Shown one piece after another: positions 13,099 to 38,765 of a DNA stretch of 64,000 nt. The notes beneath the pieces were generated by a model, which was not told the DNA's origin, did not search any database, and worked only from the letters and a program-made list of their open reading frames with translations. Positions within the stretch are counted from its first letter, which is position 1. Every line of letters starts with the position of its first letter. This stretch comes from Diadema antillarum (taxonomy: Eukaryota), in the NCBI RefSeq assembly GCF_040938485.1, contig NW_027271468.1:248001-312000 (forward strand), written 5' to 3'. Both the position numbers and the translations under genes were made by a program.

Positions 13099-13345
13099 AT
13101 GTCGGCTCTGGTTGGAGCACGCGTTGTACGGGGGCCGAGCTGGAATTGGGGGGAGCAGGACGGCGGAGAAGGCCACCTTGGTACCATCACGGCCGTAGTC
13201 GTCCCCGTCACGGACCATACCGATGGTGATTCGCCCTTGTCTCCGACGGCAGTGAAAGTTACCTGGGATAGCGGGAAGAAGGGCAATTACCGCACAGGCT
13301 TCGGCGGGGAGTTCGACCTCAGGCTGTACAGCAGCGCACCGGCAG
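13099..13345 (+). CDS. Gene 1 exon 1: first MIB/HERC2 domain
   Basis: GARVVRGPSWNWGEQDGGEGHLGT...VTWDSGKKGNYRTGFGGEFDLRLY; acceptor cag at 13094-13096 just upstream of the ATG; donor G|gtcag, phase 1. Confidence 0.93.
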
Positions 13346-37300: not shown

Positions 37301-38765
37301 ATACTGCATAGACAAAATCATAATAGGTAGTGCTAAACGTGGATATGGCCGTGTCGTATACATTAACAATACTAAATCATCAGAACTACACATAGATATT
37401 AGTTTAACAGTTTACCTACGTCTGTATATGGGCTGTGTGCTAAAATTTTTTTTTCAAGGAAATCAAATATTGAAAAAAAAAAAGAATTACATCACGTGTA
37501 TCTTACAACAATATAGGAAAAAAATACATTCATAGTGTCATAGTCACAGTCTTTAAGGTATAAACATAACAATAAGATCAAAGGAATCGAGGATACACTT
37601 GTTTCAGAATAAAGAGGAAGAAAAAAAAACATGCAGGAGTCTGCCGTCTTTATTGACTATACATGTCAGAATGTAATACATTGTATGTACATTATTATGT
37701 CCTTACGCAGAGAATACCACTGACGTGGGAGCTGAAGATGGCAATTAGCCTGGATTTGCTTACGGCATTGACCTATCTTCATGCATCCAAAATTCTCCAC
37801 CTCGACATCAAACCATCGAACGTTATGGTAAGGCAATCAATTCGGAAAGTACATTGTAAGTTAAGTAAACCCTTTCGGACCATTTAATTCCAAACATTAT
37901 TGACATAGCACACAAACAGCTCGCCATTTGGTAATAAGCGGGTGATGCGAACAAGACAGTGGCGGGAAAAGAGTAGCTCACATCGTCACGATACAAGATA
38001 CAGTTGGCTGTTAAACCCAAGATTGTTGTATTTTCTCTACCAATGTCTACAAATTAAAGTATTCAAGGCTAATGGGACGTTTTAAATTTTACATTTAGGT
38101 CTCTATTGCAACAGGCCCATCTGATTATATCATAGTATTGTTGTCTAGATATGAGAAAGCTAAGGACAATTATTGTAGTCCGATGTCAGACATGATTAAT
38201 TGCTGGGTTTCGTTCATTTTACTGGGCATATTATTTCATATAGCCTCGTGAAAGGAAAGTAAGGGAGATGGATTATTTGATATTGCATTGCATTTCTTCA
38301 CCATTATTTAAGGTGGCGTACGGCTCCAATCGTGCCTACCTCTGTGACTTAGGTCTGGCGCACATCAAGACACGGAGCGCAATGTCGCTTTCGACGTCCG
38401 TCCGAGGTCCCCGTGGGACCATGCTCTACATGGCCCCAGAAGTCGCGGAGCACCATGGAGCGGGTTGGGCCTGTGCGGCGAACGATATCTGGTCCATCGC
38501 CTGCACTTTTCTCGAGCTTTTCGTCGAGGAGCGACTGTGGGCAGGCTTGGACATCCTTGGCGTCATGCAAAAGATGCTGAAGCCGGCAGCTAAGCCACCC
38601 ATCCTGCCGAAAGCATCACCCCAGATCCGCAAACTGTTGGAGCCCTGCTTTGAAAGGGACCCGCAGACGAGGCCCAGCGCGGAGACGCTGCTCGAACAGT
38701 TCCGGCTGCTGCAGCAGAACCCGGCTGAACACGGCAGTCGCTATGTTTGCCATCCCCATCTCTGA
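13099..38765 (+). CDS. MIB2-like: Mind bomb (MIB2)-like protein lacking RING fingers and fused to a C-terminal protein kinase; 21 coding exons; frameshifted in exon 4 as written
   Basis: Exons 13099-13345, 16489-16660, 17047-17153, 17523-17740, 18416-18528, 19373-19480, 20233-20337, 20886-21096, 22992-23037, 24768-24897, 25820-25968, 26754-26910, 27710-27864, 29742-29868, 30445-30663, 31894-32069, 32808-32929, 33609-33798, 35057-35186, 37711-37827, 38313-38765. All introns are GT-AG and the phases chain correctly. The total is 3429 nt (1142 aa + stop) once one copy of the 23-bp duplication in exon 4 is removed. Motifs of MIB/HERC2, ZZ, MIB repeat, ankyrin and kinase domains are recognisable. 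Confidence 0.9.
13915..14459. mobile_element. Tc1/mariner (Tigger/pogo-like) MITE
   Basis: TIR CAGAGCACTCCCGTTACAACGAA / TTCGTTATAACGGGAGTGCACTG; left TA; internal TTCGTTATAACGAA repeats. Confidence 0.75.
14855..15325. mobile_element. MITE-like repeat with palindromic sub-repeats
   Basis: GCGGTCAGACTGGCAAAA at ~14859 and ~15059, with reverse copies TTTTGCCAG at ~15119 and ~15307. Confidence 0.45.
15840..16271. mobile_element. Kolobok-like non-autonomous element
   Basis: TTAA|AGGGATG ... CATCCCT|TTAA. Confidence 0.65.
16489..16660 (+). CDS. Gene 1 exon 2: ZZ zinc finger
   Basis: CVGC..CTMC..CTDC..HAATH spacing; cag| acceptor and GG|gtaag donor, phase 1 to 2. Confidence 0.93.
17047..17153 (+). 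CDS. Gene 1 exon 3: start of second MIB/HERC2 domain
   Basis: ARGLLPGAKVKRGSDWNYEDEDG; cag| acceptor and G|gtaag donor. Confidence 0.92.
17523..17740 (+). pseudogene. Gene 1 exon 4: second MIB/HERC2 domain, frameshifted by a 23-bp tandem duplication (TAG at 17675-17677)
   Basis: GGKKQWGNVKDVCDWS..VIVQWSNGLTKKYRAGHDGKVDVKA, then the duplicate copy. Removing 23 nt gives KATEGADGECFYIHHLASVG, which ends at the G|gtgagt donor (17741). Confidence 0.85.
18416..21096 (+). CDS. Gene 1 exons 5-8 (18416-18528, 19373-19480, 20233-20337, 20886-21096): two MIB repeats (REP/SH3_15-like) plus acidic linker
   Basis: IGDKLMIVMDMESL..; FHTGDRVRISSNIDLIKRLQVGHGDWTDTMK; TVGQCGTVVKVFDDSDLIVEV..YHPALI; GT-AG borders, phases 0, 0, 0, 1. 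Confidence 0.88.
21453..22063. repeat. Fold-back inverted repeat (~210-bp arms) in gene 1 intron 8
   Basis: 21453-21660 is the near reverse complement of 21847-22063. Confidence 0.8.
22545..22617 (+). other. tRNA-derived SINE-head-like sequence
   Basis: A-box-like GCAGTTGGTAG, B-box GGGTTCGAATTCC and terminal CCA; stems degenerate. Confidence 0.5.
22992..32069 (+). CDS. Gene 1 exons 9-16: linker and ankyrin-repeat array
   Basis: Ankyrin motifs TALHVASHEG, GDTALAYAVIG, TPLHLSAAKG, GFTPLHYAV, GYTPLHLAVVNN, TPLHFATHLG, DTALHVAV, GLRPLDL in in-phase GT-AG exons. Confidence 0.9.
25431..25725. mobile_element. MITE with internal 17-bp tandem array
   Basis: TIR-like CACGAGACCGACACCCACGAGTCATACAGCCCAC, mirrored at 25690-25725; about 7 copies of CACGAGTCATACAGCYC. 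Confidence 0.6.
28292..29663 (+). mobile_element. Helentron-associated/DINE-1/pearl-like non-autonomous element in gene 1 intron 13
   Basis: Subterminal IR GCTCACCTGAG / CTCAGGTGAGC; 5' hairpin TGAGCC-GAA-GGCTCA; (CGTCG/CGTC) microsatellite; four ~320-bp core repeats plus a partial one; 3' hairpin AGACCC-CC-GGGTCT; CTTGTT end. Confidence 0.75.
32444..32636. mobile_element. Short Tc1/mariner MITE related to 13915-14459
   Basis: TA|CAGCGCACTCCATTACAAC ... GTTGTAACGGAAGTGCACTA|TA. Confidence 0.6.
32808..32929 (+). CDS. Gene 1 exon 17: Ala/Pro/Lys/Arg-rich linker between ankyrins and kinase
   Basis: cag|t acceptor and G|gtacc donor; stop-free EEDAQLDKPDKRTKAEEQRQKPAVKRAATPQRAAAPTKRP; phases 2 to 1 join exon 16 to exon 18 exactly. 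Confidence 0.75.
33609..38765 (+). CDS. Gene 1 exons 18-21 (33609-33798, 35057-35186, 37711-37827, 38313-38765): Ser/Thr kinase domain, TKL/RIPK-like
   Basis: GRGGFGEV, VAVK, KKEISIH (alphaC Glu), HPNIV, MEFING, HLDIKPSN, DLG, GTMLYMAPE, DIWS, DPQTRPSA; stop TGA at 38763-38765. Confidence 0.93.
35998..36590. repeat. Near-identical ~300-bp tandem duplication in gene 1 intron 19
   Basis: TCAGCAGGCTGATTGTAACCAGGGAGG...ACGACAGCTGCT at ~35998-36282 and ~36300-36590. Confidence 0.85.

What the first reader, a model, noticed from the sequence alone, without database searches (positions are those of the whole stretch)
13099..38765. Mind bomb scaffold with its E3-ligase RINGs replaced by a protein kinase
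Seen: 21 in-phase exons give MIB/HERC2-ZZ-MIB/HERC2, two MIB repeats and ankyrins, then a linker exon (phase 2 to 1) that joins directly to a full kinase domain and stop. No Cys/His RING pattern appears in any exon. Known: MIB1/MIB2 end in RING fingers; their MZM and REP domains bind Notch-ligand tails; MIB2 ubiquitylates RIPK1, and MIB1 was described as a DAPK interactor. Inference: a substrate-recognition scaffold has been rewired from ubiquitination to phosphorylation, a Rosetta-stone fusion of MIB with a RIPK-like kinase. I do not know of this architecture being described, but I cannot search.
Basis: partly seen in the sequence, partly recalled or inferred. Interest (0 to 1): 0.87.

Follow-up and report, generated by a model that had tools for sequence, protein, structure and literature searches.

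The report
Sea-urchin Mind bomb scaffold ending in kinase
This sea-urchin gene keeps the substrate-grabbing front of the Mind bomb ubiquitin ligase but ends in a protein kinase instead of RING fingers. It belongs to an old, multi-copy, urchin-only family that databases mislabel as "MIB2" ligases, and the copy in this assembly carries a frame-breaking 23-base duplication.

Summary
On the + strand, 21 GT/AG exons (13099-38765) encode MIB_HERC2-ZZ-MIB_HERC2, two Mind bomb repeats, ankyrin repeats, a 41-codon linker exon (phase 2 in, phase 1 out) and a complete protein kinase domain. No RING-coding sequence exists anywhere in the 64-kb window.

The gene is not unique. It is the syntenic ortholog of Diadema antillarum XP_071494341.1 and D. 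setosum XP_072174502.1, which have the same 21 exons. The family was found only in echinoids (Diadema, Strongylocentrotus, Lytechinus), in at least four paralog clades older than the Diadema/camarodont split. RefSeq and UniProt call these proteins "E3 ubiquitin-protein ligase MIB2" or "RING-type E3 ubiquitin transferase". I found no paper describing the architecture.

All parts are under purifying selection (dN/dS 0.12-0.37). Intron positions across the fusion junction are conserved in S. purpuratus. The kinase keeps its catalytic motifs.

The kinase is MAP3K-like (nearest solved: CTR1, TAK1, MLK), not RIPK-like. The window's copy has a 23-bp tandem duplication in exon 4, absent from both other Diadema genomes, which stops the frame after 226 residues. 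This is either a null allele or an assembly error.

The same 23-bp duplication was noted earlier in this scan (s1-220825).

Verdict: a real, conserved, undescribed variant of a known family.

The parts
13099..13345 (+). Exon 1: start codon and first MIB_HERC2 domain
   Evidence: Pfam PF06701 E 3.4e-22. 100% colinear with P0167 and P0284.
16489..16660 (+). Exon 2: ZZ zinc finger
   Evidence: Pfam PF00569. Cys/His ligands present. Splice sites.
17047..17153 (+). Exon 3: start of second MIB_HERC2
   Evidence: Pfam PF06701 positions 1-16.
17523..17740 (+). Exon 4: rest of second MIB_HERC2. It is 218 nt here and 195 nt in both other Diadema loci.
   Evidence: Pfam PF06701 positions 17-64. Exon lengths.
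17642..17687 (+). 23-bp unit GATGGGAAGGTAGACGTCAAGGC present twice in tandem. It shifts the frame and gives a stop after residue 226.
   Evidence: Sequence. TRF: 2.0 copies, 100% match. Single copy in L001 and L002. Truncated product.
18416..18528 (+). Exon 5: first half of Mind bomb repeat 1 (divergent; the GHGGW motif is lost)
   Evidence: tblastn to P0151. Alignment to amphioxus MIB1.
19373..19480 (+). Exon 6: second half of repeat 1
   Evidence: tblastn. No Pfam hit on its own.
20233..20337 (+). Exon 7: first half of Mind bomb repeat 2
   Evidence: Pfam PF18346 E 8.8e-08.
20886..21096 (+). Exon 8: second half of repeat 2 and an acidic stretch
   Evidence: Pfam PF18346. Junction search.
22992..23037 (+). 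Exon 9: 46-nt micro-exon (DTDEDEQMLRNILVD)
   Evidence: Found from the gap against P0167 and the junction search. Conserved in L001 and L002.
24768..24897 (+). Exon 10: start of the ankyrin region
25820..25968 (+). Exon 11: ankyrin repeat
   Evidence: Pfam Ank E 2e-08.
26754..26910 (+). Exon 12: ankyrin repeat
   Evidence: Pfam Ank E 2e-10.
27710..27864 (+). Exon 13: ankyrin repeat
   Evidence: Pfam Ank_5 E 1.5e-09.
29742..29868 (+). Exon 14: ankyrin repeat
   Evidence: Pfam Ank E 1.8e-07.
30445..30663 (+). Exon 15: ankyrin repeat
   Evidence: Pfam Ank E 1e-12.
31894..32069 (+). Exon 16: last ankyrin-like unit of the Mind bomb scaffold; ends in phase 2
   Evidence: Aligns to the segment of MIB1 that directly precedes RING1. 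A phase-2 intron lies at the same place in S. purpuratus K1 and close by in amphioxus MIB1.
32808..32929 (+). Exon 17: charged, Pro/Ala-rich linker; phase 2 in, phase 1 out
   Evidence: dN/dS about 0.1 between D. antillarum and D. setosum. Predicted disordered, pLDDT below 50.
33609..33798 (+). Exon 18: kinase N-lobe (GRGGFGEV, VAVK). NAGNAG acceptor at 33609/33612.
   Evidence: Pfam Pkinase positions 2-53. The two RefSeq models use alternate acceptors.
35057..35186 (+). Exon 19: kinase (HPNIV ... VMEF hinge)
   Evidence: Pfam positions 54-93.
37711..37827 (+). Exon 20: kinase catalytic loop HLDIKPSN
   Evidence: Pfam positions 102-128. Family alignment.
38313..38765 (+). Exon 21: DLG, activation segment, APE, C-lobe and stop codon
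   Evidence: Pfam Pkinase positions 138-259, E 4e-15. phmmer best hit 62% to the S. purpuratus family member.
52113..63635 (+). First 10 exons of a second, tandem MIB-kinase paralog, the ortholog of D. antillarum XP_071494342.1; cut by the window end
   Evidence: tblastn with P0161, 73-100% identity. Pfam MIB_HERC2 and ZZ.

Best explanation
The locus is a single 21-exon gene of an echinoid-specific 'Mind bomb-kinase' family. An MIB2-like E3-ligase gene kept its whole substrate-recognition scaffold: the MZM module, two Mind bomb repeats and the ankyrin domain. Its 3' RING exons were replaced, at or next to a phase-2 intron at the end of the ankyrin region, by a linker exon plus four exons. Those four exons encode a MAP3K-like Ser/Thr kinase that looks catalytically competent.

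The fusion happened once, before Diadematoida and Camarodonta separated. The whole gene then duplicated into at least four paralog lineages, some in tandem; two lie in this window.

Inferred mechanism: MZM, REP and ANK dock short motifs in client proteins, as in Mind bomb with the cytoplasmic tails of Notch ligands. A roughly 45-residue disordered tether lets the C-terminal kinase phosphorylate the docked client or its neighbours. The output is therefore phosphorylation instead of ubiquitination.

Shown: gene structure, architecture, absence of RING, conservation, purifying selection, retention of catalytic motifs. Inferred: kinase activity, the identity of the clients and the biological role.

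In this assembly the copy is interrupted by a 23-bp tandem duplication in exon 4. As written it would give only a 226-residue MZM fragment.
For: - Architecture by Pfam on the window's exons and on full-length relatives.
- The same 21 exons with identical lengths and AG/GT sites occur in D. setosum and D. antillarum, and the joined CDS equals RefSeq XP_071494341.1. The loci are syntenic, with 83% and 92% nucleotide identity.
- S. purpuratus K1 shares 16-17 of 19 intron positions and phases, including ANK-to-linker (phase 2), linker-to-kinase (phase 1) and all three kinase introns.
- 7 exact and 2 near intron matches to amphioxus MIB1, which also has a phase-2 intron at the ANK end.
- The scaffold is Mind bomb to its end: exon 16 aligns to the MIB1 segment preceding RING1. 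Foldseek finds MIB1 MZM-REP 4XI6 (37% identity) and MIB1 ANK 8V0E (TM 0.88).
- No RING anywhere in the window.
- dN/dS is 0.12-0.14 for the kinase, about 0.1 for the linker and 0.12-0.37 elsewhere.
- Catalytic motifs are invariant or nearly so in 19-20 family members: GxGxFG, VAVK Lys, HLD-IKPxN, DLG, APE, subdomain XI Arg.
- Scaffold and kinase trees give the same paralog clades, each with Diadema plus camarodont members.
- A spliced RNA-derived Logan contig (SRR31798689) covers linker plus whole kinase of a paralog, with the frame open at its 5' end.
- There is no poly(A) signal in introns 16 and 17. There is no in-frame Met before the VAVK lysine, so the kinase exons cannot stand alone.
- The linker is predicted disordered between well-folded ANK and kinase.
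Against: - No transcript spanning the ANK-to-linker junction was found. A search with that junction returned only an old kinase-only model.
- Older S. purpuratus and some Diadema annotations split the locus into MIB-only, ANK-plus-kinase or kinase-only models.
- The window's own copy is frameshifted.
- Repeat 1 has lost the GHGGW motif and is not recognised by Pfam, so client recognition may differ from Mind bomb's.
- One paralog (D. antillarum XP_071494342.1) has HLN in place of HLD.
- No biochemical or expression data exist for any member.
Confidence: 0.82

Rival explanations
1. In this genome the gene is a young pseudogene or a segregating null allele. The 23-bp tandem duplication is real, the mRNA carries a premature stop after 226 codons, and no MIB-kinase protein is made from this copy. 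This concerns this copy only; the family remains functional in other genomes.
For: - The duplication is perfect and absent from both other Diadema loci.
- A 23-nt GT..AG unit is far below the intron sizes animal spliceosomes process (established knowledge).
- The neighbouring paralog in the same window also carries three 1-bp insertions in one exon, the first creating TAA.
- Tandem multigene families often carry null alleles.
Against: - dN/dS of the window copy against D. antillarum is 0.23 overall and 0.12 in the kinase, so any inactivation is very recent.
- Other first-reader notes on this genome report frame breaks in otherwise conserved genes (unchecked). That points to assembly error.
Confidence: 0.4
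2. Two neighbouring genes, a RING-less MIB-ANK gene and a separate kinase gene, are wrongly joined by the reader and by gene predictors.
For: Older annotations contain kinase-only (XP_793033.2, 293 aa) and ANK-plus-kinase (XP_011677150.1; XP_071494309.1) models. No transcript across the exon 16-17 junction was recovered.
Against: - Compatible phases across both junctions are conserved in Diadema and Strongylocentrotus.
- The linker exon is under purifying selection.
- No start codon is available for a complete kinase, and there is no poly(A) signal in the two short introns.
- The RNA contig runs from the kinase back through the linker with an open frame.
- Scaffold and kinase trees are congruent.
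- No member with a full scaffold lacks the kinase, except truncated or aberrant models.
Confidence: 0.05
3. The protein is made but does not act as a substrate-directed kinase. It could be a decoy that competes with true Mind bomb ligases for clients. Or the MIB/ANK part could only regulate or localise a MAP3K-type signalling kinase whose substrates are unrelated to what MZM/REP bind.
For: - RING-less Mind bomb fragments act as dominant negatives in flies (PMC11887331).
- Repeat 1 is divergent.
- One paralog has lost the catalytic Asp.
- Ankyrin-plus-kinase-fold proteins such as RNase L use the ANK part for regulation (fold match).
Against: Catalytic residues are conserved in nearly all members with dN/dS of 0.12-0.14. 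A pure decoy would not need this. MZM, REP2 and ANK are also conserved.
Confidence: 0.2
4. One reading: a Rosetta-stone fusion of MIB with a RIPK-like kinase, mirroring the MIB2-RIPK1 relationship.
For: MIB2 ubiquitylates RIPK1 and MIB1 was found as a DAPK interactor (general knowledge, not tested here). The kinase falls broadly near the TKL group to which RIPKs belong.
Against: - No RIPK is among the 60 best of 1283 solved-structure matches; CTR1, TAK1, MLK1/4, NEK7, ASK1 and RAF lead.
- Named relatives are MAP3K-like, CTR1-like or mos-like.
- The kinase is C-terminal, and no RHIM, death or CARD domain is present.
Confidence: 0.04

Closest known systems
Mind bomb E3 ligases (MIB1, MIB2)
   Same: - MZM module, two Mind bomb repeats and the ankyrin domain, in the same order.
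- 33-38% identity over the N-terminal 420 residues.
- Shared intron positions.
- Structural matches to MIB1 MZM-REP (4XI6) and MIB1 ANK (8V0E).
   Different: - No RING fingers, so no E3 catalytic module.
- A disordered linker and a protein kinase domain follow the ankyrins.
- Repeat 1 has lost the GHGGW motif.
RefSeq/UniProt echinoid entries named 'E3 ubiquitin-protein ligase MIB2(-like)', 'mind-bomb-like' or 'RING-type E3 ubiquitin transferase' (e.g. XP_071494341.1, XP_072174502.1, XP_030843501.1, XP_041480107.1, XP_784379.3)
   Same: Same architecture. The window gene is the syntenic ortholog of the first two, about 95% amino-acid identity with identical exon structure.
   Different: Those entries are intact. 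The window copy has the 23-bp duplication. The database names assert a RING ligase activity that the sequences cannot have.
MAP3K-type TKL/STE kinases (TAK1/MAP3K7, MLK1/MLK4, plant CTR1, ASK1)
   Same: Best sequence matches of the kinase domain among solved structures, E 2e-29 to 1e-22. Ser/Thr-type catalytic loop.
   Different: - Only about 100 bits of similarity, so no orthology to any one subfamily.
- HLD in place of HRD and DLG in place of DFG.
- A family-specific activation segment, DLGLAHIKTRSxMS.
- Different accessory domains.
Ankyrin-then-kinase-fold proteins (RNase L; by recollection also ILK and TNNI3K)
   Same: N-terminal ankyrin repeats followed by a kinase fold. RNase L aligns over about 700 columns of the model.
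   Different: No sequence relationship beyond the generic domains. Those proteins have no MZM/REP module, and RNase L and ILK are pseudokinases.
RIPK4 / ANKK1
   Same: They combine a TKL-group kinase with ankyrin repeats.
   Different: The order is reversed (kinase N-terminal). The kinase here is not RIPK-like.

Membership tests
Mind bomb (MIB1/MIB2) E3 ubiquitin ligases | MZM module: MIB_HERC2 - ZZ - MIB_HERC2 | tested here: met
   Pfam on exons 1-4. Fold match to 4XI6.
Mind bomb (MIB1/MIB2) E3 ubiquitin ligases | Two Mind bomb (SH3-like) repeats | tested here: met
   Repeat 2 is hit by PF18346. Repeat 1 aligns to MIB1 and P0151 but is divergent and not hit on its own.
Mind bomb (MIB1/MIB2) E3 ubiquitin ligases | Ankyrin repeat domain of MIB type | tested here: met
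   Pfam Ank on five exons. 8V0E 'ANK repeat of MIB1', TM 0.88.
Mind bomb (MIB1/MIB2) E3 ubiquitin ligases | C-terminal C3HC4 RING fingers (the catalytic E3 part) | tested here: not met
   No PF13920 in any family member, whereas S. purpuratus MIB2 X3 (P0314) has it. Regex and tblastn over the whole window were negative.
Eukaryotic protein kinases (catalytically competent) | Complete kinase domain with Gly-loop, VAIK Lys, catalytic-loop Asp and Asn, DFG Asp, APE | tested here: met
   Pfam positions 2-259 over four exons. GRGGFGEV, VAVK, HLDIKPSN, DLG and APE are conserved in the family. The fold is predicted with pLDDT 70-94.
Eukaryotic protein kinases (catalytically competent) | Measured phosphotransfer activity | not testable with these tools
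   Needs a recombinant protein assay.
RIPK family | Kinase domain closest to RIPK1-4 | tested here: not met
   No RIPK among the best 60 solved-structure sequence matches; CTR1, TAK1 and MLK lead.
RIPK family | N-terminal kinase with C-terminal RHIM, death, CARD or ANK module | tested here: not met
   The kinase is C-terminal. Pfam finds no such domains.
MAP3K-like kinases (TAK1/MLK/CTR1) | Membership of a specific subfamily by phylogeny | tested here: inconclusive
   Best matches but weak. In my small tree the family is its own clade apart from fungal MAP3K, CTR1-like and unnamed kinases. No reference kinome was available.
Echinoid MIB-kinase family (database entries only) | MZM-REP-ANK-linker-kinase in one gene, orthology by synteny and exon structure | tested here: met

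The most novel reading that the evidence does not exclude
Sea urchins run a 'phospho-Mind bomb' system. This is a family of kinases that use the Mind bomb MZM/REP/ANK docking scaffold to find the same kind of cytoplasmic-tail motifs as the ligase, for instance in Delta/Serrate-type ligands or other receptors. They would phosphorylate those clients instead of ubiquitinating them. That would be a natural example of a substrate-recognition scaffold re-plugged into a different post-translational modification, then expanded into several paralogs with diverging repeat 1.
Probability: 0.3. Interest if true: 0.8.

Novelty: new variant of a known kind. Interest (0 to 1): 0.55.

Why it matters
It is a clean natural experiment in modular rewiring. 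The complete client-docking part of a well-studied E3 ligase is kept under selection for a very long time (my estimate is over 200 million years, since before the two urchin lineages sampled here split) while the catalytic output is swapped from ubiquitin transfer to phosphorylation.

If the docking specificity is retained, it predicts a phosphorylation input on Notch-ligand-type tails in a classic developmental model organism. That is directly testable in S. purpuratus or Lytechinus embryos.

There is also a practical point. At least five species' annotations, and UniProt's automatic names, call these proteins RING E3 ligases. That is wrong, and it already leaks into transcriptome papers that discuss 'MIB2' in urchins (e.g. 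PMC6458246; I could not resolve which gene that paper meant).

Tried and rejected
1. Transcript proof of the exon 16-17-18 junction. A search with S. purpuratus residues 780-1000 for short RNA-derived proteins gave only an old kinase-only model. One Logan RNA contig covers linker plus kinase of a paralog but stops short of the ankyrins.
2. The 23-bp unit as a mini-intron. Rejected as too short for animal splicing, and both sister genomes simply have one copy.
3. A RING exon hidden downstream or in introns. None was found.
4. Family members outside echinoids. Among the 150 best cluster representatives of the exhaustive kinase-exon search, only echinoid proteins carry an MZM module. The N-terminal search found only RING-bearing or truncated MIBs in other phyla. 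This negative has limited power; cidaroids, irregular urchins and the other echinoderm classes were not specifically sampled.
5. Literature. Six searches and five papers read gave no description of the architecture. Bradham et al. 2006, 'The sea urchin kinome', is not held and may mention these kinases.
6. Intron comparison with a RING-bearing echinoderm MIB. S. purpuratus MIB2 X3 is not on record and the Acanthaster gene is too long. Amphioxus MIB1 was used instead.
7. Species of the window. It is neither the D. setosum nor the D. antillarum reference sequence (about 95% protein identity, dS 0.086 to D. antillarum). Stretches of 100% identity to D. antillarum suggest another haplotype, another individual or a very close sister species.
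Full report
**What is in the window.** The window is AT-rich animal DNA with short exons and long introns.
- MIB_HERC2 at 13099-13347 (E 3e-22);
- ZZ at 16476-16661;
- a second MIB_HERC2 split over two exons;
- the Mind bomb SH3-like repeat, ankyrin repeats in five exons, and a protein kinase domain spread colinearly over four exons (profile positions 2-53, 54-93, 102-128, 138-259).

With a homolog as guide I rebuilt the gene. 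It has 21 exons from 13099 to 38765, every junction AG/GT. Exon 16 ends in phase 2 at 32069. The 122-nt linker exon is 32808-32929. The kinase starts in phase 1 at 33609 or 33612 (a NAGNAG acceptor).

**No RING.** A C3HC4 regular expression over all six frames, and tblastn with the RING-bearing tails of four Mind bomb proteins, find nothing in the whole 64 kb. The same search shows that exon 16 aligns to the MIB1 segment lying immediately before RING1. So the Mind bomb scaffold is complete, and the swap point is where the RINGs would begin.

**The frame break.** Exon 4 contains GATGGGAAGGTAGACGTCAAGGC twice in perfect tandem at 17642-17687 (noted before in this scan as s1-220825). As assembled, the CDS is out of frame and stops after 226 residues. 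The orthologous loci of D. setosum and D. antillarum have one copy, and an exon of 195 instead of 218 nt. A 23-nt GT..AG unit is too short to be an animal intron (established knowledge).

The tandem neighbour gene in the window also shows three 1-bp insertions within one exon relative to D. antillarum, the first creating a TAA. Other unchecked notes on this genome report further frame breaks. I cannot decide between a null allele and an assembly error. Selection analysis shows that any inactivation is recent: dN/dS against D. antillarum is 0.23 overall and 0.12 in the kinase.

**It is a known-to-databases family.**
- An exhaustive HMMER search with the last exon found as best hit a S. purpuratus cluster (62% identity). 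Its full-length member XP_030843501.1 (1175 aa, 'E3 ubiquitin-protein ligase MIB2') has the same architecture and no RING.
- Further members occur in Lytechinus variegatus, L. pictus, Diadema antillarum and D. setosum.
- RefSeq calls them MIB2(-like), mind-bomb-like or uncharacterized. UniProt calls some 'RING-type E3 ubiquitin transferase'.
- The window gene is about 95% identical to D. antillarum XP_071494341.1 and D. setosum XP_072174502.1 (1141 and 1142 aa).
- The three loci are colinear through introns and flanks, at 92% and 83% nucleotide identity.
- My exon model transferred to the D. antillarum locus reproduces the RefSeq protein exactly.
- Part of the window is 100% identical to D. 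antillarum. The source is therefore a Diadema genome very close to that species.

**One gene or two?** Evidence for one gene:
- Both junction phases and all three intra-kinase introns are conserved between Diadema and S. purpuratus K1 (16-17 of 19 introns shared).
- The linker exon is under purifying selection (dN/dS about 0.1).
- Introns 16 and 17 are short (738 and 680 bp) and hold no AATAAA or ATTAAA signal.
- The first in-frame Met of the linker-plus-kinase part lies behind the VAVK lysine. A kinase-only transcript could therefore not encode a whole domain.
- A 1054-nt Logan contig from run SRR31798689 encodes, without introns, the linker and entire kinase of a paralog (97% to XP_030842668.1), with the frame open to its 5' end. 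This is direct evidence of expression and of the linker-to-kinase splice.
- The scaffold tree and the kinase tree recover the same paralog clades.

Evidence against one gene: I found no RNA-derived sequence across the ankyrin-to-linker junction. Older annotations split some loci.

**Origin.** Outside echinoids, every full-length relative of the N-terminal 420 residues carries RINGs (PF13920), and none carries a kinase. Among the 150 best representatives of the kinase search, only echinoid proteins have an MZM module.

The Diadema gene shares seven exact and two near intron positions with amphioxus MIB1. Amphioxus MIB1 also has a phase-2 intron at the end of the ankyrin region, after which its five RING-region exons follow. 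This fits replacement of the 3' exons at an intron, i.e. exon shuffling.

In the scaffold tree, at least four paralog clades each unite Diadema with camarodont members. The fusion and most duplications therefore precede that split. A single origin is not excluded by any well-supported branch.

**The kinase.**
- It keeps GxGxFG, the VAVK lysine, HLDIKPxN, DLG, APE and the subdomain XI arginine in nearly all of 19-20 members. One paralog, the ortholog of the window's second gene, has HLN.
- Among solved structures the best sequence matches are CTR1, TAK1, MLK1/MLK4, NEK7, ASK1 and RAF (E 2e-29 to 1e-21). No RIPK is in the best 60.
- Named relatives are MAP3K-like, CTR1-like or 'mos-like'.
- It is therefore a MAP3K-like Ser/Thr kinase forming its own clade, not a RIPK.

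**Structure.** AlphaFold with the family alignment (mean pLDDT 73.7) gives folded MZM (1-235), REP (245-385), ANK (450-805, pLDDT about 90) and kinase (855-1127). Two disordered stretches lie at 386-449 (acidic) and 807-853 (the linker exon). Foldseek finds MIB1 MZM-REP (4XI6/4XI7, 37% identity), MIB1 ANK (8V0E, TM 0.88) and, as an ankyrin-plus-kinase-fold analogue, RNase L.

**How it most likely works.** Mind bomb docks the N-box and C-box of Notch-ligand tails through MZM and REP (PMC11887331). Here that docking scaffold is conserved and tethered by a flexible linker to an apparently active kinase. The most economical reading is a docking-directed kinase. Which clients it binds is unknown. 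Repeat 1 has lost the GHGGW motif and evolves fastest (dN/dS 0.22-0.37), so specificity may have drifted. Decoy or purely regulatory roles remain possible.

**Novelty.** Six literature searches and the papers read gave no description of a Mind bomb-kinase architecture. The 2006 sea-urchin kinome paper could not be read. The architecture is thus visible in databases, under wrong names, but apparently undescribed. It is a new variant of a known kind, not a new kind.

Noticed in passing
window 52113-63635 (+): A second, tandem MIB-kinase paralog, the ortholog of D. antillarum XP_071494342.1 (73-100% identity over its first 460 residues), cut by the window end. Its D. antillarum ortholog has HLN instead of HLD in the catalytic loop, so it may be a pseudokinase.
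   Followed up: partly
window 55946-56155 (+): One exon of the second paralog carries three separate 1-bp insertions relative to D. antillarum (GGC[T]AAGG, CC[A]AGTG, CC[A]AAGT). The first makes an in-frame TAA, and together they restore the frame after about 38 codons. This could be a null allele, a compensated frameshift or an assembly error.
   Followed up: partly
window 49226-50584: 1359 bp are 100.0% identical to D. antillarum contig JBFRCO010000316.1, while neighbouring stretches are only 85-97% identical. The window may come from another haplotype or individual of D. antillarum, or from a very close sister species.
   Followed up: partly
window 33609/33612: NAGNAG tandem acceptor (tttagCAG|) at the start of the first kinase exon. 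The D. setosum RefSeq model uses the upstream site (1142 aa) and the D. antillarum model the downstream one (1141 aa).
   Followed up: yes
window 35998-36591: A 306-bp unit repeated twice (95% match) inside intron 19, flanked by CT-rich and GT microsatellites.
   Followed up: no
window 12431-13027 (-): A 198-codon open frame directly upstream of exon 1 on the other strand, with an Ile/His-rich low-complexity head. By eye its tail looks like the C-terminal part of a non-LTR retrotransposon ORF2. Pfam gave no significant hit.
   Followed up: partly
L002 neighbourhood (D. antillarum XP_071494343.1, P0287, 554 aa): D. antillarum has a further ANK-plus-kinase model 73-98% identical to the window's exons 14-21. 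This suggests a recent partial duplication of the 3' half of the gene.
   Followed up: no
Database entries XP_030843501.1 / A0A7M7P0V7, XP_030843124.1, XP_030843382.1, XP_030842668.1 and relatives: UniProt's automatic name 'RING-type E3 ubiquitin transferase' and RefSeq's 'E3 ubiquitin-protein ligase MIB2' are applied to proteins that have a kinase domain and no RING.
   Followed up: yes
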